From Octopus bimaculoides (lineage: Eukaryota), in contig NC_068986.1 of assembly GCF_001194135.2 (NCBI RefSeq), forward strand, positions 1 through 47,956: a stretch of 47,956 bases of DNA. The letters are read 5' to 3'. Below, in pieces: positions 1 to 33,304 of the stretch. A program made the translations under genes and the position numbers. Under the pieces are notes generated by a model. The model did no database searches, had not been told where the DNA came from, and saw nothing but the letters and a program-made list of their open reading frames with translations. How positions within the stretch are numbered: position 1 is the first letter of the stretch; every line of letters begins with the position of its first letter.

Positions 1-3000
1 ACTGGCCATAAAGTCGGGGACCAAAAATCGCATACTGGCCATAAAGTCGGAGACCGAACATTGTACACTGGCCATAAAGTCGGGGAACAAAATTCGCGAA
101 CTGGCCATAAAGTCGGGGACCAGAAATTCAACACTGGCGATAAAGTCGGAGACGAATAATTTGACACTGGTCCATAAAGACGAGGACCAAATACTGAACA
201 TTGGCCATAAATACGGGGACCAAAACTTGTACAGTGGCCATAAACACGGGGACCAGAAATTCAACACTGGCCATAGAGTCGGGGAACATAAATTGTACAC
301 TGGCCATAAAGTCAGAGACGAATAATTGAACACTGGCCATAAAGTCGGGGACAAAAATTGTACACTGGACATGTAGTCGGCGACCAAAAATTGAACACTG
401 GCCATGAAGTCGGGGACCAAAAATTGAATACTGGCCATAATGTCAGGGAACAAAACTTGTACACTGGCCATGAAGTTGGTGACCAAAAAATTGTACACTG
501 GCCATGCAGTCGGGGACCAAAAATTGAACACTGGCCATGTAGTTGGGGACCAAAAATTGAACACTGGACATGTAGTCGGCGACCAAAAATTGAACACTGG
601 CCATGAAGTCGGGGACCAAAAATTGAATACTGGCCATAATGTCAGGGAACAAAACTTGTACGCTGGCCATGAAGTTGGTGACCAAAAATTGTACACTGGC
701 CATGTAGTCGGGGACCAAAAATTGAACACTGGCCATGTAGTTGGGGACCAAAAATTGAACACTGGCCATGAAGTCGGGGACCAAAAATTGAATACTGGCC
801 ATAAAGACGGGGACCAAACAATGAACACTGGCCATAAAATGGGGGTCCAAAAATCGCACTCGGGCCATGAAGTCGGGGACCAAAATTTGAACACTGGACA
901 TAAAGTCGGGGACCAAAAATTGCAAATCGGCCAGAAAGACGGGGACCGAACATGTACACTGGCCATAAAATCGGGAACGAAAATTTGCACACTGGCCATA
1001 ATGTCGGGGAGGAATAATTGCACACTGGCCATAAAGACGGGGACCGAACATGTACACTGGTCATAAAGTCGGGGACCTAATTGAACACTGGCCATAAAAT
1101 GGGGGAGCAAAAATTGCACACCGGCCATAAAGACGGGGACCGAACATGTACACTGGCCTNNNNNNNNNNNNNNNNNNNNNNNNNNNNNNNNNNNNNNNNN
1201 NNNNNNNNNNNNNNNNNNNNNNNNCGAACATGTACACTGGTCATAAAGTCGGGGACCTAATTGAACACTGGCCATAAAATGGGGGAGCAAAAATTGCACA
1301 CCGGCCATAAAGACGGGGACCGAACATGTACACTGGCCTTAAAGTCGGAGAACAAAAGTCTCACAGTGGCCATAAAGACGGGGACCTAAATTTGAAAACT
1401 GGCCATAAAGACGGGGACCAAACATTGAGCAATGGCCATAAAGTCGGGGAATAAAAATTGAACACTGGCCATAAAATGGGGGACCAAAAATTTGCACACT
1501 GGCCATAAAGTCGGAGACCAAAAATTCAACACTGGTCATAAAGTCGTGGACGAATAATTACACACTGGCCATAAAGATGGGAACCAAATATTGAACACTG
1601 GCCATGAAGTCGGGGACCACAAATCGCACACTGGCCATAAACTCGGGGACAAATAATTGCACACTGGCCATAAAGACGGGGACGAAATATTGAACACTGG
1701 CCATAAAGTCGGGGACCTATAATTGCACACTGGCCATAAAGACGGGGACCAAATATTGAACACTGGCCATAAAGTCGGGGACCTATAATTGAACACTGGC
1801 CATAAAATGGGGGACCAAAAATCGCACATTGGCCAGAAAGTCGGGCAACAAAATTTGCACACTGGCCATAAAGAAGGTGACCGAACATTGAACACTTGCC
1901 ATAAATTCGGGGACCTATAGTTTAACACTGGCCATAAAATGGGGGATCAAAAATCGCACACTAGCCATAAAGTCGGGGACGAGTAATTGCACACTGGCCA
2001 TAAAGTCGGGGACCACAAATCGCACACTGGCCATAAAGTCGTGGACGAATAATTGCATGCTGGCCATAAAAACGGGGACCAAATATTGAACACTGTCCAT
2101 AAAGTCGGGTAGGAATAATTGCACACTGGCCATAAAGACGGGGACCACAAATCGCACACTGGCCATAAAGTCGTGGACGAATAATTGCATGCTGGCCATA
2201 AAAACGGGGACCAAATATTGAACACTGGCCATAAAGTCGGGTAAAGAACATTTTACACTGGCCATAAAGTCGTTGAACAAAATTTGCACACTGTACATAA
2301 AGTCGGGGACCACAATTTAAACAATGGCCATAAAGTCGGGGACGAATAATTGCACACTGGCCATAAAGACGGGGACCACAAATCGCACACTGGCCATTAA
2401 GACGGTGACCAAATATTGAACACTGGCCATAAAGTCGCGGATCTATAATTGCACACTGGCCATAAAGACGGGGACCAAATATTGTACACTGGCCATAAAT
2501 TCGGGGACCTATAATTGAACACTGGCCATAAAGTCGGGGACCAGAAATTCAACACTAGGGGACGAATAATTGCACACTGGCCATAAAGACGGGGGCCACA
2601 AATTGCACACTGGCCATTAAGTAGGGGACTAAAAATCGCACACTGGCCACAAAGTCGGGGACCTTGAACACTGGCTATAAAATGGGGGAGCAAAAATCGC
2701 CCACTTGCCATGAAGTCAGGGACCAAAAATTGAATACTGTCAAAAAGTCGGGGACCAAAAATTGTACACTGGCCATAAATTCGGGGACCAAAAATCGCAC
2801 AGTGGCCATGAAGACGGGGACCGAACATTGTACACTGGTCCTAAAGTCGGGGACGAATAATTGCACACTGGCTATAAAGACGGGGACCAAATATTGAACA
2901 CTGGCCATAAAATGGGTAGCAAAAATTGCACACCGGCCATAAAGACGGGGACCGAACATTGAACACTGGCCATACATTCGGGGACCTACAGTTTAACACT

Positions 3001-6000
3001 TGCCATAAAATGGGGGACCAAAATCGCACACTGGCCATAAAGTCGGGGAGCAATAATTGAACACAGGCCATAAAGTCGGGGACAAAAAATTGAAAACTGG
3101 CCATAAAGTCGGGGACCGAAATTTGAACACTGGCCATAAATTCGGGGACTAAAAATCGCACAGTGGCCACAAAGACGGAAACCTAAAATTGAACACTGTC
3201 CATAAAGACGGGGAACAAAAATTGAACACTGGCCATAAAGTCGGGGACCAATAATTGCGCAATGGCCATAAAGACGGGAACCAAATATTGAACACTGGCC
3301 ATAAAGTCGGGGACCGATAATTGAACACTGGCAATAAAATGGGGGAGCAAAAATCGCACACTGGCCATGAAGTCGGGGACCAAAAATTGAATACTGGTCT
3401 TAAATTCGGGGACCAAAAATCGCATAGTGGCCATGAAGACGGGGACCGAACATTGTACACTGGTCCTAAAGTCGGGGACCCAAAATTCAACACTGGCCAT
3501 AAATCGGGGACCTATAATTGCACACTGGCCATAAAGACGGGGAACAAAATTGAACATTGGCCATAAAGTCGGGGACCTATAATTGCACACTGGCTATAAA
3601 TACGGGGACCAAAATTCGCACACCAGCCATAAAGACGGGGACCAAATACTGCACCCTGGCCATAAAGACGGGGCTAAAAAATCGCTCACTGGCCATAAAG
3701 TCGGGGACGAATAATTGCACACTGGCCATAAAGACGGGGACCAAATATTGAACACTGGCCATAAATTCCGGGACCTATAATTGAACACTGGCCATAAAAT
3801 GGGGGACAAAAAATCGATCACCGGCCATTAAGTCGGGGACCAAATTCTGCACACTTGCCACAAAGACGGGGATCAAAAATCGCACACTGGCCATAAAGTC
3901 GGGGACAAATAATTGAACACTGACCATAAAGTCGGGGACCTATAATTGAACACTGGCCATAAAATGGGGGACCAAAAATCGCACACTGGCCAGAAATTCG
4001 GGGACCAAAAATTGCACACCGGCCATAAAGACGGGGACCGAACATGTACACTGGCCATAAAGTCGGGGATGAATAATTGCACACTGGCCATAAAGACGGG
4101 GACCACAAATTGCACACAGGCCATTAAGTAGGGGACGAATAATTGCACACTGGCCATAAAGACGGGGACCAAATATTGAACACTGGCCATAAATTCGGGG
4201 ACATATAATTGAACACTGGCTATAAAATGGGGGAGCAAAAATCGCACACTTGCCATAAAGTCGGGGATGAATAATTGCACACTGGCCATAAAGACGGGGA
4301 CCACAAAATGCACACTGGCCATTAAGTAGGGGACGAATAATTGCACACTGGCCATAAAGACGGGGACNNNNNNNNNNNNNNNNNNNNNNNNNNNNNNNNN
4401 NNNNNNNNNNNNNNNNNNNNNNNNNNNNNNNNNNNNNNNNNNNNNNNNNNNNNNNNNNNNNNNNNNNNNNNNNNNNNNNNNNNNNNNNNNNNNNNNNNNN
4501 NNNNNNNNNNNNNNNNNNNNNNNNNNNNNNNNNNNNNNNNNNNNNNNNNNNNNNNNNNNNNNNNNNNNNNNNNNNNNNNNNNNNNNNNNNNNNNNNNNNN
4601 NNNNNNNNNNNNNNNNNNNNNNNNNNNNNNNNNNNNNNNNNNNNNNNNNNNNNNNNNNNNNNNNNNNNNNNNNNNNNNNNNNNNNNNNNNNNNNNNNNNN
4701 NNNNNNNNNNNNNNNNNNNNNNNNNNNNNNNNNNNAGGCCATTAAGTAGGGGACGAATAATTGCACACTGGCCATAAAGACGGGGACCAAATATTGAACA
4801 CTGGCCATAAAGTCGGGGACCTATAATTGAACACTGGCCATAAAATGGGTAGCAAAAATTGCACACCGGCCATAAAGACGGGGACCGAACATTGAACACT
4901 GGCCATACATTCGGGGACCTACAGTTTAACACTGGCCATAAAATGGGGGACCAAAATCGCACACTGGCCATAAAGACGGGGATCAAAAATCGCACACTTT
5001 CCATAAAGTCGGGGACGAGTAATTGCACACTGGCCATAAAGTCGGGGACCAGAAATTCAACACTGGCCATGAAGTCGGGGACGAATAATTGCACACCGGC
5101 CATAAAGACGGTGACCGAACATGTACACTGGCCATAAAGTCCGGGAGGAATAATTGCACACTGGACATAAAGTCGGGGACCACAATTTATACAGTGCCCA
5201 TAAAGTCGGGGACGAATAATTGCACACTGGCCATAAAGACGGGGACCACATATCGCACACTGGCTATTAAGACGGGGACCAAATATTGAACACTGGCCAT
5301 AAAGTCGGGGACCTATAATTGAACAGTGGCCATAAAATGGGGGACCAAAAATCACACACTGGCCATAAAGACGGGGATCAAAAATCGCACACTAGCCATA
5401 AAGTCGGTGACGAATAATTGCACACTGGCCATAAAGTCGGGAACCAGAAATTCAACACTGGCCATAAAGTCGGGGCCCAAAAATTGCACACCGATCATAA
5501 AGACGGGGACGGAATATGTACACTGGCCATAAAGTCCGGGAGGAAAAATTGCACACTGGCCATAAAGACTGGGACCACAAATTGCACACTGGCCATTAAG
5601 TAGGGGACGAATAATTGCACACTGGCCATAAAGACGGGGACCAAATATTGCACATTGGCCATTGAGTAGAGGACTAAAAATCGCACACTGGCCACAAAGT
5701 CAGGGACCAAAAATTGATTACTGTCAAAAAGTCGGAGACCAAAAATTGTACACTGGTCCTAAAGTCGGAGACGAATAATTGCACACTGGCTATAAAGACG
5801 GGGACCAAATATTGAACACTGGCCATAAAGTCGGGGACCTATAATTGAACACTGGCCATAAAATGGGTAGCAAAAATTGCACACGAACATTGAACACTGG
5901 CCATAAATTCGGGGACTAAAAATCGCACAGTGGCCACAAAGACGGGAACCTAAAATTGAACACTGTCCATAAAGACGGGGAACAAAAATTGAACACTGGC

Positions 6001-9000
6001 CATAAAGTCGGGGACCAATAATTTCACAATGGCCATAAAGACGGGTACCAAATATTGAACACTGGCCATAAAGTCGGGGACCGATAATTGAACACTGGCC
6101 ATAAAATGGCGGAGCAAAAATCGGACACTGGCCATGAAGTCGGGGACCAATAATTGAACACTGGCCATAAGTAGGGGACCAAAAATTGAATACTGTCAAA
6201 AAGTCGGGGACCAGAAATTGTACACTGGCCATGAATTTGGGGACCAAAAATCGCACAGTGGCCATGAAGACGGGGACCGAACATTGCACACTGGCCCTAA
6301 AGTCGGGGACGAATAATTGCACACTGGCCATAAAGTCGGGGACCTATAGTTTAACACTGGCCATAAAATGGGGGACCAATAATTGCAAACTGGCAATAAA
6401 GTCGAGGACCAAAAATGGAACACTTGCCATAAAGTCGGGGACCAAAATTTGAACACTGGCCATAAATTCGGGGACTAAAAATCGCACAGTGGCCGTAAAG
6501 ACGGGAACGTAAAATTGAACACTGTCCATAAAGACGGGGAACAAAAATCGCTCAGTGGCCATAAAGTCGGGGACCAATAATTACACAGTGGCCATAAAGA
6601 CTGGGAACAAAAATTGAACACTGGCCATAAAGTCGGGGACCTATAATTGCACACTGGCCATAAAGACGGGTACCAAATATTGAACACTGGCCATGAAGTC
6701 GGGGACCAAAAATTGAATACTGGTCTTAAATTCGGGGACCAAAAATCGCACAGTGGCCATAAAGTCGGGAAACAAAATTTGCACACTGGCCATAAAGTCG
6801 GGGACCAGAAATTCAACACTGGCCATAAAGTCGGGGAGGACTAATTGCACACTGGCCATAAAGACGGGGACCACATATTGCACACTGGCCATAAAGTAGG
6901 GGACGAATAATTGCACACTAGCCATAAATTCGGCGACCAAAAATCGCACAGTGGCCATGAAGACGGGGACCTATAATTGAACACTGGCCATAAAATGGGT
7001 AGCAAAAATTGCACACCGGCCATAAAGACGGGGACCGAACATTGAACACTGGCCATAAATTCGGGGACCTATAGTTTAACACTGGCCATAAATTCGGGGA
7101 CTAAAAATCGCACAGTGACCATAAAGACGGGGACCTAAATTTGAACACTGGCTATAACGTCGGGGACCAATAATTGCACACTGGCCATAAAGACGTGGAC
7201 CAAATATCGAACACTGGCCATAAAGTCGGGAACCTATAATTGAACACTGGCCATAAAATGGCGGACCAAAAATTGAACACTGGCCATAAAGTCGGGGACC
7301 AAAAATTGAACACTGGCCATAAAGTCGGGGACAAAAATTTGAACACTGGCAATTAATTCGGGGACTAAAAATCACACAGTGGCCATAAAGACGGGAAACT
7401 TAAATTGAACACTCTCCATAAAGACGGGGAACAAAAATCGCTCAGTGGCCATAAAGTCGGGGACCAATAATTACACACTGGCCATAAAGACGGGGAACAA
7501 AAATTGAACACTGGCCATAAAGTCGGGGACCTATAATTGCACACTGGCCATAAAGACGGGTACCAAATATTGAACACTGGCCATAAAGACGGGGACCGAT
7601 AATTGAACACTGGCCATAAAATGGGGGAACAAAAATCGCACACTGGCCATGAAGTCGGGTACCAAAACTTGAATACTGGTCTTAAATTCGGGGTCCAAAA
7701 ATCGCACAGTGGCCATAAAGACGGGGACCGAACATTGTACACTGGCCATAAAGTCGGCGAACAAAATTCGCAAACCAGAAATTCAACACTGACCATAAAG
7801 TCGGGGACGAATAATTGCACACTGGCCATAAAAACGGTGACCAGAAATCGCACCCTGGCCATAAAGTCGGGGACGAATAATTGCACACTGGTCATAAAGA
7901 CGGGGCCCAAATATTGAACATTGGCCATAAAGTCGGGGACCTATAATTGAACACTGGCCATAAAATGGGGGACCAAAAATCGCTCACCGGCCATTAAGTC
8001 GGGGACCAAATTCTGCACACTGGCCTTAAAGGCGGGGATCAAAAATCGCACACTGGCCATAAAGTCGGGGACCAATAATTGAACACTGGCCATAAATTCG
8101 GGGACGAATAATCTCACACTGGCCATTAAGACGGGGACCAAATATTTGAACACTGGCCATAAATTCGGGGACCTATAATTGAACACTGGCCATAAAATGG
8201 GGGACCAAAAATCGCACACTGGCCATTAAGTCGGGAAACAAAATTTGCACACTGGCCATAAAATCGGGGACCAGAAATTCAACACTGGCCATAAAGTCGG
8301 GGACGACTGATTGCACACTGGCCATAAAGACGGGGACCAAATATTGAACACTGGCCATAAAGTCGGGGACCTATAATTGAACACTGGCCATAAAATGGGG
8401 GACCAAAAATCGCACACTGANNNNNNNNNNNNNNNNNNNNNNNNNNNNNNNNNNNNNNNNNNNNNNNNNNNNNNNNNNNNNNNNNNNNNNNNNNNNNNNN
8501 NNNNNNNNNNNNNNNNNNNNNNNNNNNNNNNNNNNNNNNNNNNNNNNNNNNNNNNNNNNNNNNNNNNNNNNNNNNNNNNNNNNNNNNNNNNNNNNNNNNN
8601 NNNNNNNNNNNNNNNNNNNNNNNNNNNNNNNNNNNNNNNNNNNNNNNNNNNNNNNNNNNNNNNNNNNNNNNNNNNNNNNNNNNNNNNNNNNNNNNNNNNN
8701 NNNNNNNNNNNNNNNNNNNNNNNNNNNNNNNNNNNNNNNNNNNNNNNNNNNNNNNNNNNNNNNNNNNNAAAATTGAACACTAGCCATAAAGACGGGGACC
8801 AAATTCTGCACACTGGCCATAAAGACGGGGATCAAAAATCGCACACTGGCCATAAAGTCGGGGACGAATAATTGCACACTAGCCATAAAAACGGTGACCA
8901 GAAATCTCACCCTGGCCATAAAGTCGGGGACGAATAATTGCACACTGGTCATAAAGACGGGGCCCAAATATTGAACATTGGCCATAAAGTCGGGTACCTA

Positions 9001-9153
9001 TAATTGAACACTGGCCATAAAATGGGGGACCAAAAATCGCACACTGACCATAAAGTCGGAGACCAATAATTGCACACTGGCAATAAAGACGGGGACCAAA
9101 AATTGAACACTGGCCATAAAGTCGGGGACCAAAAATTGAACACTGGCCATAAA
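1..9153 (+). repeat. 33-bp tandem satellite, arm A (consensus CACTGGCCATAAAGTCGGGGACCAAAAATTGAA); runs off the left edge of the window
   Basis: TGGCCATAAA recurs with a 33-nt period, and the ORF track shows an 11-aa periodicity (GHEVGDQKLNT). The array is interrupted by three N-gaps and ends at ...CACTGGCCATAAA (9153). Confidence 0.97.
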
Positions 9154-11466
9154 TGATCGTTCGTTCGTCTGGTTGTTCGTTCGTCTGGACGTTCGTTCGT
9201 TCGTCTGGTATTTCGTTCGTTCGTCCGGTCGTTCGCTCTTACGTACGTACGTACGTACGTTCGTTCGTTCGTTCGGTCGTTCTTACGTACGTACGTAGGT
9301 ACTTAAGTTCGTTCGTTCTTTCGTTCGTTCTTTCGTTCGTTCATTCGTTCTTATTTACGTACGTACGAACGTTCGTTCGTTCGTACGTACTTACGAACGT
9401 ACGTACGTTCATTCGTTCTATCCTTCGTTCGTCCGTTCTTTCGTACGTACGTCCGTTCGTTCTATTTTCGTTAGTTAATTTGTTCGCTCGTTCGTTCGTT
9501 CGTTAGTTTGTTCGTTCATTCTTTCATTCGTTCTGTCGTTCGTGCGTTCGATTGTTTGTTTCGTTCGTTCGTTTGCTCCTTCATCCGTTCTTTCATTCGT
9601 TCATTTGTTTCGTTTGTTCTTACGTACGTACGTTCGTTTGTTAGTACGTACGTACGTTCGTTCGTTCGGTCGTTCGTACGTACGTTCGTTCGTTTGTTCG
9701 TTCGTTTGTTCTTTCGGCCGTTCGTTAGTTTCGTTCGTTCGTACGTACGTTTGTACGTACGTACGTTCGTTCATTCTTTCGTTCGTTCGTTTGTTCGTAC
9801 GTACTTACTTACGAACGTACGTACGTTCATTCGTTCTATCCTTCGTTCGTTCATTCTTTCGTACGTACGTCCGTTCGTTCGTTCTTTCGTTCGAACCTAC
9901 GTATGTGCGTTCGTTCTTTAGTTTGTTCGTTCGTTCATCCGTTCGCTGTTTTGTTCGTAAGTATGAACGTACGTTCATTCGTTCGTACGTACGTACGTAC
10001 GTACGTACCGACGTACTTTTATACATACGTACGTTTGATCGTTCGTTCGATTGTTCATTCGTTCTTTCGTTCGTTCGAATGTTCATTCGTTCTTTCGTTC
10101 GTTCGTTCGTTCGTTCATTCTTTCGTTCGTTCTTTCGTTCGTTCTTTCTTCCGTTCGTTCGTTCGTTCTTTCGTTCTGTCGTTCGTTCGTTCGTTCGTTC
10201 GTTTGTTTCGTTCGTTCTTTCGTACGTACGTACTTTTGTTCGTTCGTACGTACGTACATCCGTTCGTTCGGTCATTCGTTCTTTCATTCGTTCGTTCTTT
10301 CGTTCGTTTGTTCGTTTGTGTGTTTCGTTCGTTCGTTTGTTCCTTCGTTTGTTCTTCCGTCCGTTCGTTAGTTTCGTTCGTTCGTTAGTTTCGTTCGTTC
10401 GTACGTTCTTTCGTTCTTTTATTCGTTCGTTCGTTTGTTCTTTTGTTCGTTCGTTCAATCGTTCGTTCGTTCTTTCTTTCGTTTGTTCGTTCGATCGTTC
10501 GTTCGATCGTTCGTTCGTTCGTTAGTACGTTCGTACGTACGTACGTTCGTTCGATAGTACGTTTGTACGTACGTAAGTTCGTTCGTACTTCTCTAGGTAC
10601 GTAAAATCTTTCGTTCGTACGTTCTCGCATTCGTTCGTTCGTTCGTGTGGTCGTTCGTTCGGTCATTCTTACGCACGTACATAGGTACGTACGTACGTAG
10701 GTACGTACGTACGTACGTTCGTTCGTTCTTTCTTTCGTTCGTTCGTTCGTACTTAGTAACGTACGTAGTTCGTTTGTTCGATCATTCGTACGTACATACT
10801 TATGAACGTACGTACATTCATTCGTTAGTACGTACGTAAGTATGTACGTATGTGATTACGTACGTACGTACGTTTGATCGTTCTTTCGTTTGTTCATTTG
10901 TTCTTTCGTTCGTTCGTTCGTTCGTACATTCATTCTTTCGTTCGTTTGTTCATACGTACATCCGTACGTACGTTCGTTCGTTCGCTCGTTTGTTCTTTCG
11001 TTCGTTCGTTCTTTCTTCCGTTCCTTCGTTCGGTCTATCGTTCGTTCGTTCTTTCGTTCGTTCGTTTGTTCGTTCGTTTGTTCTTTCGTTCCTTCGTTAG
11101 TTTCGTACGTTCGATCATACGTACGTTCGTTCTTTTGTTCGTTCTTTCGATCGTTCATTCGTTTCTTTTTTCGTTTGTTCGTTCGATCTTTCGTTCATTC
11201 GTTCGTTAGTTCGTACGTACGTACCTACTTACGTACGTTCGTTCGTTTGTTCGTTCGTACATACGTACATTCATTCTTTCGTTCGCTCGTTTGTTCGTAC
11301 GTACGTACGTTCGTTCGTACGTACATTCGTTACTTCGTACGTTCGTTTGTTCATTCATACATATATACATATGTAAAAACGTACGTTCGATCGTTCGTTC
11401 GCTGCTTATTTCGTTCGTACGTTCGTTCACTTCGTTCGTTAGCTCGTTCTTACGTACGTACGTACG
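9154..11466 (+). repeat. CpG-dense degenerate tetranucleotide array (TTCG)n/(TACG)n, forward arm B
   Basis: A mosaic of TTCG, TACG, TTTG, TTCA, TTCT and TCCG units in a 4-nt register. Confidence 0.97.
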
Positions 11467-12644
11467 AATGAGCGAACGAACGTTATGAACGAACTAACGA
11501 ACGTTATGAACGAACTAACGAACGAACAAACGAAAGAACGAACGAACGAACGTAAGTACGTACGAATGTACGAACGGACGAATGTACGTACGTACGAACG
11601 AACGTACGTACGAACGAACGTACGAACGTACCTACGAACGAAGGTACGTACGAACGAACGAACGTACATACGTACGAACGAACGATCGTACGTATGAACA
11701 AATGATCGAAGGAAAGAAAGAACGTACGTACGTAAGTACGTCGTACGTACGAACGAATAAACGAACGAACGAACGTAGGTAGGTACGTGCGTACGTACGA
11801 ACGAATGAACGAACGTATGAAAGAGCGATCAAACTTAGGAACGTACGTACATACCTCTATACGTATGAACGAACGAACAAACGAACGAACGAATGAACGA
11901 GGGAACGAACGTACGTACGTACGAATGTACGAAAGAACGAACGTATGTAAGAACGTACGTACGTTCGTACGTACGAATGAACGAACGAACGCCCTAACGA
12001 ACGAACGTACGTACGAACGAGCGAATGGAGGAAAGTGCGTACATACGTCCGTACGTACGAACGAATGAACGAACGAACGACCGAAGGTACGTACATGCAA
12101 CGAACGGACGAACGTACGTACGTAAGAACGAGCAATAGAATGAACTAACGAATGAACGTACTTATGAACGAACGAAAGAACGAACGAACGTCCGAACGTA
12201 GGTATGTAAGAACGAATAAAAGAACGAACGTACGTACGTACATAAGAACGAACAAACGAACGAACGTACGCATGTGCGAACGAAAGAAAGATCGAACGAA
12301 CAAACAAACGAACGTACGTGCGAACGAACGAACGTACGTACGTACATCCGTACGTAAGAACGATCGAAGGAGCGAACAAACGTACGTACGTACGAATGAA
12401 CAAACTAACAAAAGTACGTACATAAGAACGAACGAAATTAAAGAACGAACGAACGAACGAAAGAACGAACGAACGAAAGAACGAACGAACATAAATACGT
12501 ACATACGTAAGAGTGAACGTACGAACGAACGTACGTACGTACGAACGAACGTACGTCCGTACGTGCGTATGTACGAAAGTACGAACGAAAGAAAGAAAGA
12601 ACGTACGAACGAACGAACGTAATTACGTACGTACGTACGTACTT
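11467..12644 (-). repeat. Same tetranucleotide array in inverted orientation, (CGAA)n/(CGTA)n, arm B'
   Basis: The sequence switches from TTCG to CGAA units directly after the (TACG)4 run at 11451-11466. Confidence 0.95.
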
Positions 12645-14483
12645 ACTTTATGGCCAGTGTTCAATTTTTGGGCCCCGATTTTATGGCCAGTGTTCAATTT
12701 TTGGTCCCCGACTTTATGGCCAGTGTTCAATTTTTGGTCCCCGACTTTATGGCCAGTGTTCAATTTTTGGTCCCCCACTTTATGGCCAGTGTGCAATTTT
12801 TGGTCCCCGACTTAATGGCCAGTGTGCAATTTTTGTTCCGCGACCTTATGGCCACTGTGCAAACATTTTGAACCCGACTTTATGGCCAGTGTGCAAATGT
12901 TTGGACCCCGAGTTTATGGCCAGTGTTCAATTATTGGTCCCCGACTTCATGGCCATTGTTCAATTTTTGGTCCCCGACTGTATGGCCAGTGTTCAATTTT
13001 TGCTCCCCGACTTTATGGCCAGTGTTCAATTTTTGGTCCCGAACTTTATGGCCACTGTGCAAATGTTTCGACCCCGACTTTATGGCCAGTGTTCAATTTT
13101 TGGTCCCCCACTTAAGGCCATTGTTCAACACTTGGTCCCCGACTTTATGGCCAGTGTTCAATTTTTGTTCATCGACTTTATGGTCAGTGTGCAAATGTTT
13201 GGACCCCGATTAAATGGCCAGTGTGCAAATGTTTGGTCCCCGACTTTATGGCCAGTGTTCAATTTTTGGTCCCCGACCTTATGGCCAGTGTGCAAACATT
13301 TTGAACCAGACTTTATGGCCAGTGTGCAAATGTTTGGACCCCGAGTTTATGGCCAGTGTTCAATTATTGGTCCCCGACTTCATGGCCAGTGTTTAATATT
13401 TTGTACCCGACTTTTTGGCTAGTGTTCAATTTTTGGTCACCGACTTTATGGTCAGTGTGCAAATGTTTGGACCCCGATTAAATGGCCAGTGTGCAAATGT
13501 TTGGACCCCGACTTTATGGCCAGTGTGCAAATATTTAGACCCCGATTTTATAGCCCGTGTTCAACTTTTGGTCCCTGTCTTTATGGCCAGTGTTCAATTT
13601 TTGGTCTCCTACTTTATGGACAGTGTTCAATTTTTGGTCCCCGATTTTATGTCCTGTGTGCAAATGTTTCGACCCCGTCTTTATGGCCAGTGTTCAATTA
13701 TTGGTCCCCGACTTTATGGTCAGTGTCTAATTTTTGGTCCCTTTATGGCTAGTGTTCAATTTTTGGTCCCCGACTTTATGGCCACTGTGCAAATGTTTAG
13801 TCCACGACTTTATGGCCAGTGTGCAAATGTTCGATCCCCGATTAGATGGCCAGTGTGCAAATGATTGGACCCGAATTTATGGCCAATTTCCCAATGTTTC
13901 GACTCCTACTTTATGGCCAGTGTGCAAATGTTTGGACCCCGAATTTATGTTTGGAGTCCGAATTATGGCGACTGCGTAAACATCTGGTCCCCAATTTTAT
14001 GACTACTGTGTAAATGTTTGGAGTCTGAATTTATCGCCAATGTGTAAATGTTTGGACCCCGACTTTATGGCCACTGTGTAAATGTTCAGAAACCGACTTT
14101 ATGTCCAATGTGTAAATGTTTGGACCCCTAATTTATGGTCACTGTCTAAATGTATGGTCCCAAACTTAATGGCCACTGTGCAATTTTTTGGACCCCGACT
14201 TTATAGCCACTGCATATATGTTTGGACCCACGACTTTATGGCCACTGTGTAAATGTTTGGACCCCGACTTTATGGCCACTGTGCAATTTTTTGGACCCCG
14301 ACTTTATAGCCACTGCATATATGTTTGGACCCCGACTTTATAGCAACTGCATATATGTTTGGACCCACGACTTTATGGCCACTGTGTAAATGTTCGGACT
14401 CCGAATTTATGGCCACTGTGTAAATGATTGGACCCCGAATTTATGGCAGCTATGCAAATGTTCGGACCCCGACATTATGGCCA
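12645..14483 (-). repeat. Inverted satellite arm A': 33-bp units grading into 34-bp units
   Basis: It begins ACTTTATGGCCAGTGTTCAATTTTTGG with a 33-nt period (12681 to 12714). Further on it reads GACTTTATGGCCACTGTGTAAATGTTTGGACCCC with a 34-nt period (14232 to 14266). Confidence 0.95.
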
Positions 14484-17400
14484 CTAAGTTGGGGACAATA
14501 CATTTACACAGTGGCCATAAAGTCGGGGTCTAAACATTTACACAGTGGCCATAAATCGGGGTTCAACCATTTATACAGTAGCCATAAAGTCAGGGTCCAA
14601 ATATTTACACTGTGGCCATAACGTCTGGGTCCAAATATTTACTCAGTATCTATAATGTCGGGGTCCAAACATTTGCACAGTGGCCATAAAATCGGGGACC
14701 AAATATTTACTCAGTGGCTATAAATTCGGGGTCCAAACATTTACACAGAGGTCATAAAATCGGGGTCCTAACATTTACACAGTGGCAATAAATTCGCGTA
14801 TTATACATTTAAACAGTGCCCATAAAATCGGGTCCAAACATTTGCACAGTAGTCATAAAGTCGGGCTCCACACAAATATACAGTTCATAAATGGGGGTCC
14901 AAACATTTACACAGTTGCAATAAAGTCGGGGTCCTAATATTTACAGTGACCACAAAATCTGGGTTCTAACATTTACACAATCTCTATAAATTCGGGGTCC
15001 AAAATTTCGACAGTGGCCATAAATCGGGGTCCATAAAACGGTGACCATAACGTCGGGGTCCAAATATTTACGCAATGGCTATAAATACGAGTTCGAAACA
15101 TTTACACAGTTGCCATAAACTAGGGGTCGAAACATTTACACAGTGGCCATAAAGTCGGGGTCCAATCATTTAAACGGGCGCCATAAAGTCGGGTCCAAAC
15201 ACTTACACATTGGTCATAAAGTCGGGTCCAAACACTTACACATTGGCCATAAAGTCGGGATATAAATATTTACACAGTGGCTATAATTTCGGGGTCCAAA
15301 TATTTACGGAGTGGCTATAAATACGGGTTTTAAAAATTTAGACATAAATTCGGTGTCCTATCATTTACACACCGGCTAAAATATGGCGGTCCAAACATTT
15401 ACACAGTGGCCATGAAGTCGGGGTCCAAATATATATACAGTGGCCATGATGTCGGGGTGCAAACATTCTCATAGTGGCTATTAAGTCGGGGTGCAGATAT
15501 TTAAACAGTGGCCTTAAATTCGGGGTCAAAACACTTACACAGTCACCATAAAATCGGGGCCCAAACATTTACACAGTAGCCATAAAGTCAGGGTCCAGAA
15601 ATTTACACAGTGTCTATAAAGTCGGTGTCCAAATATTTATGCAGTGGCTATAAATCCGGGTTCCAAACATTTACACAGTTGCCATAAATTTGGTGTCTAA
15701 ACATTTACACAGTGGCCTTAAAGTCGGGGTCCAAACATTTACACAGTGGCCAGAAAGTGTGGTTCCAAACATTTAGACAGTTGCCATAAAGTCGTGGTCC
15801 AAACATTTACGCATTGGCTATAAAGTCATGGTCCAAACATTTGCAGACTGGCCATAAAGTCGTTGTCCTATCTTTTACACACCGGCTAATATATGAGGGT
15901 CCGAACATTTACACAGTAGACATAAATTTGGGGTCAAAACATTTAAACGGTGGCCGTAATTTCAGGTCCAAACAATTAAACAGTGGCCATAAGTTCGGGG
16001 TCTAATCATTTAAACGGGGACCATGAAATCGTGGTCCAAACATTTACAGAATGGCCATAAAGTCGGGGTCCAAGCATTTACACACTGGCCATTAATTCGG
16101 GGTGCAAACATTTGCGCATTGGCCATAAATCGGGGTCCAAACATTTACACAGTAGCTTATAAAGTCTGGGTCCAAACATTTCACGGTGGCCAGAAAGTCG
16201 GGTGCTCCAAATATTTACGCAGTGGCCATAATTTCGGGTTCCAAACATTTATACAGTGGCCATAAATTCGGGGTCCAATCAGTTACACAGTAGCCATAAT
16301 GTCGGGCTCCAAAAATTTTCACAGTGGCCGTAAAGTCGGGGTCCAAACATTTACACAGTTGCCATAAACTCGGGGTCCAAACATATTCACAGTCGCCATA
16401 AATTTGGGTTCCAATTATTTACATAGTGGCCATAAAATCGTGGTCCAGACACTTATGTATTGGCTATAATGTCAGGGTCCAAACATTTGCACAGTGGTCA
16501 TAAATTCGGTGTCATATCATTTACACACCGGCTAAAATATGGTGGTCCAAACATTTACACAGTGGCCATAAAGTCGGCTTCCGAACATTTACACAGTGGC
16601 CATAATGTCGGGGTCCAAATATATATACAGTGGCCATAATGTCGGGGTGAAAACATTCTTATAGTGGAGATTAAGTCGGGGTGCAAACATTTAAACAGTG
16701 GCCTTAAATTCGGGGTCAAAACATTTGCACTGTAGCCATAAAATTGGGGCCCAAACATTTACACAATAGCCATAAAGTCGGGGTCCAAACATTCTCACAG
16801 TGGCCATAAAATCGGGGTCCAAACATTTAAACGGTGGCCATAGATTCGGGTCCAAATATTTATAGAGTGGCCAAAAATTCGTGGTCCAATCATTCAAACG
16901 GGGGCCATACAGTCGGGGTCCAAACATTTACACATTGGCCATATAGTCGGGATATAAATATTTACACAGTGGCTATAACTCGGGGTCCAAATATTTACGC
17001 AGTGGCTATAAATCCGGGTTCCAAACATTTACACAGTTACCATAAACTTGGGGTCCAAACATTTGCACAGCGGCCGTAAATTCGGGGTCCAAATATTTAC
17101 ACACTGGCCATAAATTCTGGTTCCAAACTTTTAGACAGTTCCATAATGTCTGGGTCCAAACATTTACACAATGGCCATAAAGTCTGGCTCCAAACATTTA
17201 GACAGTGGCCATAAAGTCGGGGTCCAATTATTTAGACAATTGCCATAAAGCCGTGGTCCAAACATTTACGCATTGGCTATAAAGTCAGGGTCCAAACATT
17301 TACACAGTTTCTATAAAGTCGGTGTCCAAATATTTATGCAGTGGCTATAAATCCGGGTTCCAAACATTTACACAGTGGCCATAAATCGGGGTCCAAACAT

Positions 17401-17756
17401 TTACACAGTGGCCTTAAAGTCGGGGTCCAAACATTTACACAGTGGCCAGAAATTGTGGTTCCAAACATTTAGACAGCCTCCATAAAGTCGGGGTCCAATT
17501 ATTTACACAGTTGCCATATAGTCGGGGTACGAACATTTACGCAGTGGCTATAAAGTCAGGGTCCAAACATTTGCACAGTGGTCATAAAGTTGGGGTCCTA
17601 TCATTTACACACCGGCTAAAATGTGGGGGTCCAAACATTTACACAGTGGCCATAAATTCGGCGTCCAAACATTTACCCAGTGGCCATAAAGTCGGGGTCC
17701 AAACATTTACACAGTGGCCATAATGTGGATGTCCAAACATTTGCACAGTGGTCTAT
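14478..17756 (+). repeat. 34-bp tandem satellite, arm A'' (consensus ACAGTGGCCATAAAGTCGGGGTCCAAACATTTAC)
   Basis: The period is 34 nt (e.g. TGGCCA at 17681 and 17715). It shares the TGGCCATAAAGTCGGGG core with the 33-bp unit. Confidence 0.96.
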
Positions 17757-17778
17757 CCCTAACCCTAACCCTAACCCT
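17757..17778 (-). repeat. Short telomeric-type repeat (CCCTAA)3 CCCT, i.e. TTAGGG on the minus strand
   Basis: The sequence CCCTAACCCTAACCCTAACCCT is seen directly. TTAGGG is the canonical telomere repeat reported for molluscs. Confidence 0.85.
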
Positions 17779-18008
17779 GTGTGTGTTCTTGTGTCTGTGT
17801 GTCTGTTTATTCCCCACCATTGCTTGACAACCAGTCTCGGTGTGTTCTCTTCCCCATAACTTCGTGGTTTGTCAAAAAGAGCAATATGAAAAGTACCAGG
17901 CTTTACAGAAAAAAAGATAGCAAGTACTGGGGTCGATTTGTTTGATAAAAATTCTACATGACAGTACCCCCAACATGGCTGCAGTCTAATGAGTGAATCA
18001 AGTAAAAA
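17779..18008 (+). mobile_element. SINE family A, 3' half only (TG linker plus tail); tRNA head absent
   Basis: TGCTTGACAACC...AAGTACC...AGTACTGGGGTCGATTTG...CATGGCTGCAGTC...AAGTAAAA matches the reverse complement of the tails at 28084-28290 and 42137-42320. Confidence 0.75.
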
Positions 18009-18486
18009 AATATATTTATCTCACATATCCCAGAGTAGGAGGTCTCCCTAGTCATACTAATGGCCACATACTATTATGTAATGCCAAATCAGTATTATAA
18101 CTCATGTTCACCAAATGATTATAACTTGTGGGGTAGGGAAAACATTTGAGGATATCACAAGTAATGACTGATAAGATTTAGATAAAGTAATTAAAAAGAA
18201 AAAAAGTAGTTTATAAAAATAATTCATCTATATGACTTGTCATGAAGGGAAAAAAGATAACTATACATCTATCAATGGTGTTATTATCATAACACCATTT
18301 GCATTCTCGGTTAAGCAAAAGCAAAAAAAAAACTAATAATAATCTCTGGATTATGGACCAACAGGTGGTCATTGCAATCTCGTTTTGATTTATTTAAAAC
18401 TCTTCCGCTGGCAGCTTGTAATGAAATCAACCAATTAAATCTTGTTTATATAGTTAGCAATAAAAGTCATGTTTATTGCTATTCAC

Positions 18487-18493
18487 ACACACG

Positions 18494-18548
<55 letters not shown>
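18487..18548 (+). repeat. (CA)n microsatellite
   Basis: Seen directly. Confidence 0.95.
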
Positions 18549-18550
<2 letters not shown>

Positions 18551-20920
18551 AATACTCCTCTCCATCACATATTTGTAAGAATGTGTATTTGTTTATGTAT
18601 GAATATATTTACATATTCTGTAATGTACATATACAAATAACTGAATGGATGTACTTGTAAATAGGAACAATGCATGTAAGTNNNNNNNNNNNNNNNNNNN
18701 NNNNNNNNNNNNNNNNNNNNNNNNNNNNNNNNNNNNNNNNNNNNNNNNNNNNNNNNNNNNNNNNNNNNNNNNNNNNNNNNNNNNTATATATATATATATC
18801 CATCCATCTTCTCCACCTACAATTTCTGGTTTCTGAGAGAGATGTGGGAGTATAGTCCTTAGGCACCTCCTGTATAAGATCTATCATTCTAGACTAAGGT
18901 CTTGCAGTAGAGTGGTCAAGTAATGGGCGATGGTAATGCAAAAAGAAAATGTTGGAAAAGGTAGGTTATTTTTGTGAATAGAAAGTGAAGTGATTGCCTG
19001 AATGAGAGATGTCACTTTCTTATGTGCTTCTGTCTGTGCCATTTAACACATTTTTTTTTATTTAACACTTCACCAGCCATTGCTCAACTACTCTGATAAA
19101 GAACTTCAATTGCAACAATGGGGTTTCCCTGCTCCTAAATGCAAATGAACTTACTGAAACTGTCATTCTTGAATTTTATGAATATATTATCAGTGACTGA
19201 AACCCTTACCAGTATTTTGTATTCTTAGTTTTGTAGTCCAGGATCAGTTAAGTGTAGTTATCCTGGGTGTATGAAATAAATCAGTATTCCTTATACATTA
19301 GCTGTATCCTTAGCCAAGGCATTTTTATGAGTTCAATACACCTAATAATAATAAACAGGTGTCATCTCAAGATATGTACTCACGGTTGAACAGACTAATA
19401 ATCAAAGACTTTTTAACTGTAACCATTCCATCCTGGTTTTAGAAATGGTATTTATATGTGGTTCAATGGACCCTTCTTTTATTTGCAAGAATAGCATATG
19501 AGATGTGGAAAAGTTGGTTGCTATTTCTAGCAGGTGGGAATAGGAATCTTCTCTTGTATTCTATTTGCTTCAGAATAACCTTATCTAATGCATTGTTCTA
19601 ATAAGATATTACACGTAATGACTGATCTCATCATAAACAGGAAACTTTCATCAGAGTGATGCAGTACTAGGATATGAGGAATTCAGCAAGAATAAAAATA
19701 TAATCTCCTCATAATTCTTTAATGAATAGTGCAGAGTTCATAAGTTTAAAGTATATCAATAAATATGAAACAGTTCAATATCAGATCAATTTGAAGTAAT
19801 AATTCTGGTAGAATTAGTACCAATTACTTAATTACAATCAATTTGGTGAACTGATGTAAACTAAAGTAAATGCACCGCTTAAATCATTCTGTCCATTCAT
19901 TCTGGGATGTAGAGGAAGTGGTGGTAGAGTCTTCAGGTACCTCTTCCATAGGGTCTTAACAGAAGCAACCATCATTCCACTCTTCGGCTGGATTCCAAAT
20001 CGACTACGTTAAGTATACAAAACAATTTTAGCTAATGAGGATGTTTAAGTGATTGCTCGATCTGTAAATTTAGTATCTAAATCTCCCTCTGACTACACCC
20101 TACCAACTTAAAAAAGAATAAACAACACATTGGATAATGTAGTCGTGAATACATTGTATAATATATAAAACGGAAAGGTTACTGAAGTTGATCCAAGACT
20201 AAACAATGACCAACGTTGACCAACGACGGTGCATCTACGTTGCGTTCGACTAATTACATTTAAGTCCTACTTCTCAAATCAAATCCCACTGCTTAAAAAA
20301 AATGGCCACGTATATTGCAGAGCTTGATAATCGTTACCTCTGAAAAAAAAGAAAGGAGATGGGGAAATAAAGGTTGACAGTAGTTGAGATAATAGTCGCA
20401 GCTTAAATGCTTCTGATCAATGGTCTTCTCCGACAGGGTTGCCTTCTCTCGATATTGTCTTACACATGTAAAATTATTAGAATATTTAGTTGATTAACTA
20501 GAAAAACGAGGTTTGAGAAATGTCTTAGTAATTGAGGCTTTGCCTTTAAAGCTATAAATTCCAAATAAGGAGTTTACTTTTATCGAATATTTAACGGTTC
20601 AATCTAAGTGAAAGAAACATAAAAATAATTCAGGTCTACCAAATTTTAAAATGCTCAAATTTCACACTATTTTCTGAAGATGTGAAGAAGAATAAAAGAA
20701 GAAGGGGAAAAGGACAAAAGAAACACTTAAGAACGAGGGGAAATAGCTTAGGTTCAGAGGAGATAGAAAATAGGAGAAAGAAAATAGAATGACTGGAAAC
20801 GTTTCTCATTTCGAGAGAAGTAGACTATAATAAACAAGAAAATTATGGCAAAGCTGCATGATAGTGGTGTCAGACATGGAATGTAGACCGGCATACAATT
20901 TGTTTTATCCTTCTCTTCTG

Positions 20921-21386
20921 TTTTATTTCACAACTAACGGAGCACGAAGCGCTCCTCACAAACGCAGTTCACGAGATTGTTGTGATCTGTAAACGGTTTT
21001 GAGTAGGAACTGGAGAATAAAGAATGAACACGCAATGCGCATGTGCATACTGAATTCCTAAAACGGAAGAAAAAACTAAAAACACAATGTGCATGTCAAC
21101 ATAAAAAGGAGGAGAAGAATAAAATTGCAATGTCAAACAAGTTGTATGATGGTCTGCATGCTACGTTTGACACCACTGTCACGCAGGTTTGTTGCAGTTT
21201 TCTTGTTTTGACATGCACATTGCATTTTTATTCTTCTCTTCCATTTTACAAATTCACAGTGCACATGCACATTGCGTGTTCATGCATCTCTTTCCGGTTC
21301 CTACTCAAAACTGTTTACAGATCACAGCCATCTCACAGATCTGCGTTCGTGAGGAGCGCTTTGTGCTCCTATGGTTGGGAAAAAAG
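20921..21386. mobile_element. Fold-back / long-TIR MITE-like element of about 465 bp, almost entirely palindromic
   Basis: GGAGCACGAAGCGCTCCTCACAAACGCAG (20939-20967) pairs with 21341-21369 at 27/29. GTGATCTGTAAACGGTTTTGAGTAGGAACTGGA pairs with about 21293-21325 at 31/33. Inner blocks (AATGTGCATGTCAA / TTGACATGCACATT) also pair. Confidence 0.8.
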
Positions 21387-25539: not shown

Positions 25540-25790
25540 CGTTTGTATTTGAAGTGTATAAATATATTTCGTTTTGTATATAAATACATTACGTTCACAT
25601 TTAAAGCGTATGGATAGATTTTGTTTTGTATAATAGATATGTTTTGTTTGCATTTAAAATGTATTAATACATTTTGTTTTGTATATAAATACATTACGTT
25701 TGCATTTTAAGCGTATGAGTACTAAAATATTTTGTTTCCTATAATATATATTTTGATCGCATTTGAAATGTATAAATATGTATACGATTA
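25540..25790 (+). repeat. AT-rich minisatellite of about 52 bp, 4-5 copies with alternating (dimeric) units
   Basis: GTTTTGTATA starts at 25571, 25623 and 25676. Units 1 and 3 share TATAAATACATTACGTT...TTTAAGCGTATG, which unit 2 lacks. Confidence 0.75.
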
Positions 25791-33268: not shown

Positions 33269-33304
33269 ATTGTTGCAGGAGCAAACGGGGTGAACAGGAC
33301 ATTT

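What the first reader, a model, noticed from the sequence alone, without database searches (positions are those of the whole stretch)
1..17778. 17.8-kb zig-zag tandem-repeat complex: two inversion centres, nested satellite and CpG arms, ending in telomere repeats
Seen: the order is 33-mer(+), TTCG/TACG(+), CGAA/CGTA(-), 33-to-34-mer(-), 34-mer(+), (CCCTAA)3.7. The first four blocks form a giant asymmetric palindrome with satellite outside and tetranucleotide inside, and a second head-to-head reversal follows at about 14480. Known: breakage-fusion-bridge and fold-back repair at chromosome ends produce such alternating orientations, and Drosophila Foldback elements have inverted arms built of short tandem repeats. 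Inference: this is either a fossil subtelomere or fusion site, or a giant foldback-type element with composite arms. I do not recognise this satellite as a described family.
Basis: partly seen in the sequence, partly recalled or inferred. Interest (0 to 1): 0.8.

Follow-up and report, generated by a model that had tools for sequence, protein, structure and literature searches.

The report
Old octopus satellite block with orientation flips
This is a real but ordinary kind of junk-DNA block: an undescribed 33/34-base satellite plus a CpG-rich four-base repeat, probably from an octopus genome. It changes strand orientation twice and abuts a 22-base telomere-type scar, and there is no sign that it is a gene or a mobile element.

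Summary
The blocks are:
- 33-mer(+) at 1-9153
- TTCG/TACG(+) at 9154-11457
- CGAA(-) at 11458-12644
- 33-mer(-) grading through a 33/34 mosaic into 34-mer(-) at 12645-14480
- 34-mer(+) at 14481-17756
- (CCCTAA)3.7 at 17757-17778

The "palindromes" are mostly orientation switches. Mirror-image identity survives for only about 50-60 bp around the first axis (11457|11458, inside a self-complementary (GTAC)n run). There is none at the second axis (14480|14481, the monomer's own TGGCCA palindrome). Monomers are about 78% alike within and between blocks, so the assembled arrays are old and decayed.

The three N gaps lie inside the 33-mer array with the same orientation on both sides. Two of them have flanks that overlap exactly (115 and 51 nt), so array lengths are unreliable.

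The telomere tract is short and exact. It points the right way for the right-hand DNA and cuts a dispersed SINE-like repeat at its internal (TG)n, so it looks like a break-repair or healing scar.

The flank carries a repeat shared with Octopus bimaculoides. A foldback transposon is not supported. The satellite family is undescribed, but every structural element is known. Interest is low to moderate.

The parts
1..9153 (+). Block A: forward 33-mer satellite. Consensus TGGCCATAAAGTCGGGGACCAAAAATTG(A/C)ACAC. About 250 units. It contains N gaps at 1160-1224, 4368-4735 and 8421-8768. It runs to the first base of the window, so its left end is unknown.
   Evidence: 218 exact-length units, mean 0.877 identity to consensus, all classed as 33-type.
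9154..11457 (+). Block B: degenerate (TTCG)n interspersed with self-complementary (TACG)n. It is CpG-rich, at 15.9 CpG per 100 bp and o/e 3.46.
11421..11494 (.). Inversion centre 1. The axis is 11457|11458 inside GTAC|GTAC. It is a local imperfect palindrome of about 2 x 37 nt, and the only place where mirror symmetry beyond repeat-family level survives.
   Evidence: best axis, 32/40; rank 0-1 among more than 2200 and more than 1100 registers; hairpin -28 kcal/mol, z = -5.68, against z = 0.20 for a control stretch of block B.
11458..12644 (-). Block B': the same tetranucleotide array in reverse orientation (CGAA/CGTA). CpG o/e is 3.42. It is half as long as B.
12645..14480 (-). Block A': reverse satellite. 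It holds near-consensus 33-mers next to B' (12645 to about 12800), a mosaic of 33- and 34-type units up to about 13950, then pure 34-type units up to the axis.
   Evidence: (class string 4444...43334333444333443.43334333344333333, read from 14478 down to 12645).
14478..14483 (.). Inversion centre 2. One TGGCCA hexamer, the unit's own palindrome, is shared by the last reverse unit and the first forward unit. The axis is 14480|14481.
   Evidence: Read directly from the sequence. There is no mirror identity above background. The hairpin is weak, z = -3.09.
14481..17756 (+). Block C: forward 34-mer satellite. Consensus TGGCCATAAAGTCGGGGTCCAAACATTTACACAG. About 95 units. The last unit is cut within its TGGCCATA part (TGGTCTAT).
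17757..17778 (+). Short interstitial telomere-type tract, CCCTAA x3 + CCCT, exact. It is the only such tract in the window. Its orientation is that of a left-end telomere for the DNA to its right.
17779..18030 (+). A copy of a dispersed SINE-like repeat that starts in its internal (TG)n and lacks the head present in another copy (42230-42640, reverse strand). This marks the proximal edge of the complex.
   Evidence: Alignment. The right end at about 18030 is approximate.

Best explanation
A non-coding heterochromatin block in an octopod genome. It is built from one undescribed satellite family with two length variants (33 and 34 nt) and a CpG-rich TTCG/TACG microsatellite. The arrays grew by ordinary tandem-repeat mechanisms (slippage and unequal exchange) and then decayed to about 12-13% from consensus. 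The two orientation switches are old rearrangement scars, made where a single strand can pair with itself: the (ACGT)n run and the unit's TGGCCA. The first switch most likely arose by a fold-back (hairpin or template-switch) inverted duplication of an existing 33-mer-to-TTCG junction. The arms then changed length independently. The 22-nt CCCTAA tract is a scar of telomerase action at a broken end inside a dispersed repeat. That end was either healed for a time or joined at once to a satellite-bearing end, so the satellite lies distal to it. The arrangement fits a chromosome-end or subtelomere-like setting but does not prove one. What is shown: the layout, the age and divergence, the local palindrome, the phase of the junctions, the truncated repeat and the lack of coding or mobile-element signals. 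What is inferred: the fold-back mechanism, the telomerase scar and the terminal location.
For: - Layout.
- Age and divergence: about 0.78 pairwise identity within and between blocks, with no lag periodicity and no gradient towards the centres. Identity to consensus is 0.87-0.88.
- Centre 1: its mirror match is the best or second best of all registers, and it forms a strong hairpin.
- Outer junctions: both cut the unit after TGGCCATAAA(G).
- Centre 2: it sits exactly on the shared TGGCCA.
- Assembly support: the junctions lie in gap-free sequence, and all 31- to 101-mers at both centres and at the telomere junction are unique in the window, bar one repeated 31-mer at centre 2. The palindromes at the axes (about 16 nt and 6 nt) are too short for a k-mer graph to flip strand by itself.
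- Telomere junction: the tract is exact and correctly oriented, and it replaces the head of a dispersed repeat.
- Not coding: there are open frames in 4 of 6 frames but no relative among 5.8 billion proteins. The 34-nt variant breaks the frame.
- Host: a dispersed repeat in the flank is 76% identical over 59 aa to an annotated Octopus bimaculoides protein.
- Literature: fold-back inversions through single-strand hairpins, and inverted duplications with short or no spacers, are established (PMC7467729 and PMC3907307). ITS classes are in PMC6410037. Strand switches are common in complete satellite arrays (bioRxiv 10.64898/2026.07.22.740206).
Against: - There is no mirror signal at centre 2, nor beyond about 60 bp at centre 1. 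An inverted duplication is therefore inferred from weak relics.
- A strict breakage-fusion-bridge history does not fit. The middle (inverted) pass holds 33-mers and TTCG, which the innermost pass (34-mers only, 3.3 kb up to the telomere tract) lacks.
- The clustering of four boundaries within TGGCCATAAAG is only mildly unlikely by chance. My own estimate is about 0.04-0.06, and two of the four may be copies of one event.
- No other copy of the satellite could be fetched, so genome-wide placement is unknown.
- The window comes from a gapped short-read-style scaffold, and block A is stitched from four contigs.
Confidence: 0.55

Rival explanations
1. One simple inversion. The ancestral array was all forward and built of repeated macro-units (34-mer, then 33-mer, then TTCG). 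A single inversion of 11458-14480 created both switch points at once.
For: Re-inverting 11458-14480 gives a regular forward series: 33-TTCG / 34-33-TTCG / 34 (layout). This needs one event instead of two. It also explains why both 33-mer-to-TTCG junctions share a phase.
Against: It does not predict the residual mirror symmetry of irregular bases around 11457|11458. It also needs both breakpoints to fall exactly on macro-unit borders.
Confidence: 0.15
2. Assembly or scaffolding artefact. One or both reversals, or the join across the telomere tract, do not exist in the chromosome.
For: The window has 11 N gaps. Gaps 1 and 2 have exactly overlapping flanks, and contigs end where units become consensus-like. 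A perfect hexamer tract could have been collapsed if the assembler used k below about 22. That would let a satellite-CCCTAA edge and a CCCTAA-unique edge from different places be joined.
Against: All five junctions lie in one gap-free stretch, 8769-18681. K-mers across the two centres and the telomere junction are unique in the window at k = 31 to 101, except for one repeated 31-mer at centre 2. The self-complementary cores are far shorter than usual k values, and odd k rules out self-complementary nodes. The arms are not near-identical mirror copies, which a missed-adapter or chimeric long read would give.
Confidence: 0.12
3. A foldback-type transposon, or its remains. Its inverted arms are built of the 33-mer (outer) and the tetranucleotide (inner), as in Drosophila FB or Tetris.
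For: There are inverted arms made of tandem repeats, with two nested repeat types. Foldback elements can seed satellites (PMC4079207).
Against: - Arms are very unequal, at least 9.1 kb against 1.3-1.8 kb.
- There is no non-repetitive terminal flanking domain and no middle domain.
- The right arm runs straight into another array of the same family in opposite orientation.
- There is no in-register arm identity.
- There are no isolated units or second copy in the other 30 kb, nor in any searchable collection.
- The left end lies outside the window, so target-site duplications cannot be checked.
Confidence: 0.06
4. An interstitial relic of an end-to-end chromosome fusion. The satellite would be the subtelomere of the partner chromosome.
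For: A telomere-type tract lies between a satellite block and ordinary DNA.
Against: There is no head-to-head TTAGGG/CCCTAA arrangement and only one orientation is present. The tract is 22 bp and exact rather than long and degenerate. From my own knowledge, octopod karyotypes are conservative.
Confidence: 0.08

Closest known systems
Strand switches and inversions inside satellite arrays, as seen in complete (T2T) assemblies such as human beta-satellite and HSat3
   Same: Long tandem arrays of one family change orientation at sharp points with no other sequence between them. The switches are viewed as by-products of array turnover (bioRxiv 10.64898/2026.07.22.740206).
   Different: Here the array is small, old and decayed. 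It lies in a mollusc, carries a second nested repeat type at one switch, and is not known to be centromeric.
Fold-back inversions / inverted duplications (hairpin-primed or template-switch, with or without breakage-fusion-bridge cycles)
   Same: The junctions are head-to-head and centred on short self-complementary sequence with little or no spacer. A telomere-type addition lies nearby (PMC7467729, PMC3907307 and PMC3834830).
   Different: Those cases have long, nearly identical mirror arms. Here only about 50-60 bp of mirror identity remains at one centre and none at the other. The block contents also do not fit a strict BFB series.
Short interstitial telomeric sequences (s-ITS) and subtelomeric ITS that divide proximal from distal subtelomere (yeast X-ITS-Y', human subtelomeres)
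   Same: A few exact hexamers lie at a junction of unrelated sequences, oriented like the true telomere. Repeat arrays lie distal and ordinary DNA proximal (PMC6410037; PMC9498494).
   Different: Subtelomeric ITS are usually longer and degenerate. The s-ITS insertion mechanism is documented for mammals, not molluscs. A terminal position is unproven here.
Foldback transposons (Drosophila FB, Galileo, Tetris)
   Same: Inverted arms composed of short tandem repeats. Such elements are a known source of satellites (PMC4079207).
   Different: No terminal unique domain, no middle domain, no target-site duplication that can be tested, no other copies found, and grossly unequal arms.

Membership tests
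Satellite DNA | Many head-to-tail copies of one unit in long arrays | tested here: met
   About 390 units of 33/34 nt in three blocks. 50 pattern matches against 0 expected.
Satellite DNA | Non-coding | tested here: met
   ORFs are at most about 200 aa without N, spread over 4 frames and broken by stops and 32/34-nt units. A protein search found no relative. Rfam found nothing.
Fold-back inverted duplication | Mirror-image arms in register | tested here: inconclusive
   Block order is mirrored. Sequence is mirrored only for about 50-60 bp at 11457|11458. There is none beyond that and none at 14480|14481.
Fold-back inverted duplication | Axis on a short inverted repeat or microhomology, with little or no spacer | tested here: met
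   One axis lies in GTAC|GTAC of a (TACG)4 run, and the other in the shared TGGCCA.
Breakage-fusion-bridge series | Each inverted pass contains only material present in the preceding pass | tested here: not met
   The inverted pass holds 33-mers and TTCG, which are absent from the innermost pass. That pass is 34-mers only, up to the telomere tract.
Foldback transposon | Long terminal inverted repeats containing tandem repeats | tested here: inconclusive
   Inverted repeat-built arms exist, but they are at least 9.1 kb against 1.3-1.8 kb and show no in-register identity.
Foldback transposon | Unique terminal (flanking) domain and a middle domain | tested here: not met
   The right arm abuts an opposite-strand array of the same family. 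The centre is only the tetranucleotide array. Features as defined in PMC4079207.
Foldback transposon | Target-site duplications of 8-10 bp | not testable with these tools
   The left end lies beyond base 1 of the window.
Foldback transposon | Several dispersed copies in the genome | tested here: inconclusive
   None in the other 30 kb, none in metagenome, viral or prokaryote collections and none among predicted proteins. The host genome itself could not be searched.
Fusion ITS | Head-to-head (TTAGGG)n(CCCTAA)n | tested here: not met
   There is only CCCTAA x3.7 and no TTAGGG run in the window.
Short ITS at a repaired break | A few exact hexamers between two unrelated sequences | tested here: met
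   22 exact bases lie between a cut 34-mer unit and a head-less dispersed repeat.
Short ITS at a repaired break | Absent from the orthologous site of relatives (insertion polarity) | not testable with these tools
   No related octopod locus could be fetched.
Subtelomeric ITS / telomere-associated repeats | Tract oriented like the terminal telomere, with repeat arrays distal to it | tested here: met
   CCCTAA is on the + strand, with the ordinary DNA to the right and the arrays to the left.
Subtelomeric ITS / telomere-associated repeats | Location within some tens of kb of a chromosome end | not testable with these tools
   The array reaches base 1 of the window. Whether a scaffold or a chromosome ends there is unknown.

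The most novel reading that the evidence does not exclude
The zig-zag is a germline fossil of repeated fold-back events at an octopus chromosome end. All array boundaries are drawn to one site in the unit, the TGGCCA palindrome within TGGCCATAAAG, because that site is a preferred break or hairpin point. The CpG-rich TTCG/(ACGT)n array was born at, and grew outward from, the first palindrome centre. If so, the family would be a natural model for how satellites invert and how new chromosome ends are capped in cephalopods. A weaker variant is that the composite unit is a very large foldback-like mobile element.
Probability: 0.1. Interest if true: 0.6.

Novelty: new member of a known kind. Interest (0 to 1): 0.3.

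Why it matters
Little is known about cephalopod satellites and chromosome ends. I found no paper holding this unit and no cephalopod satellite survey in the library. The locus gives a named 33/34-nt family, a CpG-rich tetranucleotide partner and a telomere-type scar. These can be used as FISH and long-read probes for octopus chromosome ends or heterochromatin. It is also a practical warning for annotation. The 33-nt period gives open frames in four of six frames, and the gap flanks are duplicated. As biology it is a further example of known satellite behaviour, not a new mechanism.

Tried and rejected
- **Coding repeat (11-codon period, TGHKVGDQKLN):** rejected. Frames are broken, the 34-nt variant shifts the frame, and no relative exists.
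- **Long true palindromes:** rejected by both-strand self-BLAST and register-displacement tests.
- **Higher-order repeat structure:** TRF suggests 99, 66/67 and 137 nt. Unit-to-unit identity by lag shows no clear period, so I make no HOR claim.
- **Origin of the unit from another element in the window:** the best local alignments do not exceed those of shuffled queries.
- **Fishing related loci failed throughout.** The metagenome scan gave 19 stretches, all chance matches or unrelated repeats. The viral scan gave none. The prokaryote-genome scan gave 16 chance matches.
- **Organism via the mariner copy:** only 57-69% identical hits. An exact look-up of the window's mariner ORF found nothing. 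Two ENA contigs lacked the window's dispersed repeat.
- **Exact-string search of papers for the SINE-like repeat:** none.
- **tRNA and Rfam scans:** nothing.
- **Inverted repeats I1-I11:** these are N runs matching N runs, not real repeats.

Full report
**What is there.**
- Block A: 251 forward units with 33-nt spacing from base 4 to 9112. The array ends at 9153.
- Block B: a period-4 TTCG/TACG array running to 11457.
- Block B': the same array as CGAA/CGTA running to 12644.
- Block A': 52 reverse units from 12640 to 14467, spaced 33 or 34 nt.
- Block C: 89 forward units with 34-nt spacing from 14479 to 17716.
- An exact CCCTAACCCTAACCCTAACCCT at 17757-17778.

A two-unit pattern matches 50 times against 0.00 expected from shuffles. 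Per-100-bp counts show TTCG falling to zero and CGAA rising within one bin at about 11460. The corrected junctions are 9153|9154, 11457|11458, 12644|12645, 14480|14481 and 17756|17757.

**Gaps.** The window has 11 N runs of odd lengths, so it looks like a scaffold built from shorter contigs. The three gaps inside the finding all lie in block A and have forward units on both sides.
- The last 115 nt before gap 1 are identical to the first 115 nt after it (1045-1159 = 1225-1339).
- The same holds for 51 nt at gap 2 (4317-4367 = 4737-4787). These contigs overlap, so the N runs there are scaffolding artefacts or stand for collapsed repeats.
- As written, gaps 1 and 2 break the 33-nt phase by 18 and 24 nt. 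Gap 3 is in phase, which has about a 1-in-33 chance.
- Contig ends resemble each other and are more consensus-like. The assembler seems to have stopped where the array is more uniform, so the real block A may be much longer.

By contrast, 8769-18681 is gap-free and holds every junction. At both centres and at the telomere junction, all 31- to 101-mers are unique in the window apart from one repeated 31-mer at centre 2. The two outer junctions are unique from k = 71.

**The units.** The 33-type consensus is TGGCCATAAAGTCGGGGACCAAAAATTG(A/C)ACAC. The 34-type consensus is TGGCCATAAAGTCGGGGTCCAAACATTTACACAG. They are clearly one family.
- Block A is purely 33-type and block C purely 34-type.
- The reverse block changes from 34-type at the second axis, through a mosaic, to near-consensus 33-type next to the tetranucleotide.
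- Mean pairwise identity is 0.77-0.80 within blocks. It is 0.78 between A and the 33-type zone of the reverse block, and 0.77 between the reverse 34-type units and block C.
- There is no trend with distance from either centre and no clear periodicity by lag.
- Units are 0.87-0.88 identical to their consensus. The 22 33-type units of the reverse block are 0.93.

The assembled arrays are therefore old and decayed.

**CpG.** The CpG of the unit is kept in 82% of block A units, no worse than other positions. CpG o/e is 3.4-3.5 in the tetranucleotide blocks against 0.82 in the flank.

**Are the palindromes real palindromes?** Only in block order and strand.
- Reverse-strand self-BLAST finds the reverse block matching any register of block A at about 80%.
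- At the second centre, in-register mirror identity (0.79-0.82) is no better than registers displaced by 1-5 units (0.77-0.89).
- At the first centre, gapped mirror scores over 120-1100 nt equal those of displaced registers.
- The first centre does keep a local relic. Ungapped mirror matches of 26/32, 32/40, 38/48 and 43/60 are the best or second best among more than 2200 alternative registers on the left and more than 1100 on the right.
- The stretch 11421-11494 folds as a single DNA hairpin of -28 kcal/mol (z = -5.7). A control stretch of block B gives z = 0.2.
- The first axis lies in GTAC|GTAC of a (TACG)4 run, which is its own reverse complement.
- The second axis lies in the middle of one TGGCCA hexamer, the unit's own palindrome. 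The last reverse unit and the first forward unit share it.

**Junction phase.** Both outer 33-mer/tetranucleotide junctions cut the unit at the same place. The junction at 9153 reads ...ACTGGCCATAAA|TGATCG. Read on the reverse strand, the junction at 12645 reads ...CACTGGCCATAAAG|TAAGTACG. The last 34-mer before the telomere tract is also cut in this motif (TGGTCTAT|CCCTAA). Four boundaries within about 7-8 nt of a 33-nt unit has a chance of roughly 0.04-0.06 by my estimate. That is suggestive only, and two of the four may be copies of one event.

**The telomere-type tract and its right flank.** The tract is short (22 nt), exact and unique in the window. With CCCTAA on the + strand, it has the orientation of a left-end telomere for the DNA to its right. 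Directly after it comes a dispersed SINE-like repeat that begins in its internal (TG)n. A second copy (42230-42640, reverse strand) carries a further head (...GAGTGGATTTGGTAGGCGGAAACTGAAAGAAGGCC...) upstream of the same (TG)n and body. So the edge of the complex is a break inside a dispersed repeat, followed by telomere repeats and then satellite.

In the published classes (PMC6410037), a few exact hexamers are a short ITS. I know of such tracts as insertions at repaired breaks from Nergadze et al., whose paper titles appear in the reference lists shown. I did not read those papers. [quoted passage not shown] The fusion hallmark is absent here.

**Host and surroundings.** The 30 kb to the right is AT-rich and full of (AC)n and similar microsatellites.
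- It carries several copies of dispersed repeats (families D6, D7, I12-I14, I18).
- It carries a decayed mariner transposase.
- I found no convincing gene.
- I recognised the repeats from memory as octopod. As a test, the translation of the repeat at 42628-42837 is 76% identical over 59 aa (E = 4e-19) to 'uncharacterized protein LOC106868243 [Octopus bimaculoides]', with no other strong hit.

The window therefore most likely comes from an octopus. The exact species is not shown.

**What it is not.**
- Not a gene. The 33-nt period gives open frames in one forward and three reverse frames, but they are short and broken. No relative exists, and the 34-nt variant breaks the frame.
- Not a known RNA.
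- Not derived from anything else in the window.
- Not found in papers, metagenomes, viral contigs or prokaryote genomes.
- A foldback transposon, as defined by Tetris/FB (PMC4079207), needs unique terminal domains, a middle domain, 8-10 bp duplications and several copies. The first two are not met, the third cannot be tested and the fourth is unsupported.

**How it most likely arose.** The arrays are ordinary satellite and microsatellite DNA.

The first reversal is best explained by a fold-back inverted duplication. A single strand ending in the self-complementary (ACGT)n run snaps back or switches template, and copies the 33-mer-to-TTCG junction in mirror image. This mechanism is documented in yeast and human (PMC7467729 and PMC3907307). 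Slippage then changed the two tetranucleotide arms to 2.3 and 1.2 kb and erased the register beyond about 60 bp.

The second reversal, on TGGCCA, may have the same kind of origin but keeps no relic. Alternatively, both switches are the two ends of one inversion of 11458-14480 in a forward series of 34-33-TTCG macro-units. That model is tidy but does not predict the relic at the first centre.

A strict breakage-fusion-bridge series is contradicted, because the inverted pass holds repeat types that the innermost pass lacks. The telomere tract records telomerase action at a broken end that now joins satellite and ordinary DNA.

Strand switches are frequent in completely assembled satellite arrays, so the pattern is not exceptional.

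**Verdict.**
- A subtelomere-like or break-repair setting is plausible.
- Fusion is unsupported.
- A foldback element is unsupported.
- 'Giant palindrome' overstates what the sequence shows.

The satellite family appears undescribed, but every structural element has known parallels. It is a new member of a known kind, with an interest of about 0.3.

Noticed in passing
window 1045-1159 vs 1225-1339; 4317-4367 vs 4737-4787: The sequences on the two sides of gap 1 and gap 2 are exact duplicates of each other (115 and 51 nt). The contigs overlap, so the N runs and one copy of each duplicate are probably assembly artefacts.
   Followed up: yes
window 40139-40971 (-): A decayed mariner-family transposase, split over several frames. 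Pfam Transposase_1 matches it. The best database relatives are 57-69% identical, and none is close enough to name a source.
   Followed up: partly
window 33036-33425, 38367-38965, 42230-42840, 47625-47956, 17779-18030: Copies and fragments of dispersed SINE-like repeats with an internal (TG)n. One part is 76% identical, as translated, to an annotated Octopus bimaculoides 'uncharacterized protein'. That protein is therefore probably a repeat-derived gene model.
   Followed up: partly
window 1-9153 and 12645-13949: The 33-nt period equals 11 codons. The array is open in one forward frame (TGHKVGDQKLN) and all three reverse frames, giving many spurious ORFs of 100-200 aa. This is a trap for gene finders.
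   Followed up: yes
window 9154-9240: The tetranucleotide block starts with three copies (plus a variant with GTCCGG) of a longer irregular unit containing GTCTGG (TTCGTTCGTCTGG...). The mirror arm near 12644 has no counterpart.
   Followed up: no
window 11356-11379: A small AT-rich non-repeat island (catacatatatacatatgtaaaaa) lies about 90 bp left of the first axis. The right arm has no mirror partner for it.
   Followed up: no
window 43821-43992 vs 44564-44747: A direct repeat of about 130-170 nt, 88-93% identical and about 750 nt apart, lies just right of the 775-N gap. It is either a local duplication or another gap-flank artefact.
   Followed up: no
window 20973-21107 and 21200-21334: An inverted repeat of 135 nt, 81% complementary, with a 92-nt spacer. 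It is possibly a MITE-like element.
   Followed up: no
window 25540-25722: A 52-nt tandem repeat in 3.5 copies, AT-rich and unrelated to the satellite.
   Followed up: no
window 42927-43837 and 46913-47468 (I1-I11): The long 'inverted repeats' reported here are runs of N matching runs of N, not real repeats.
   Followed up: yes
L029/L034 (JAFZUV010000008.1, Clostridia MAG), L029 about 6180-6340: An unrelated 33-nt tandem repeat containing CTTTATGGCC in a rumen Clostridia genome bin. It matched the search pattern by chance, and there is no match to the whole unit.
   Followed up: partly
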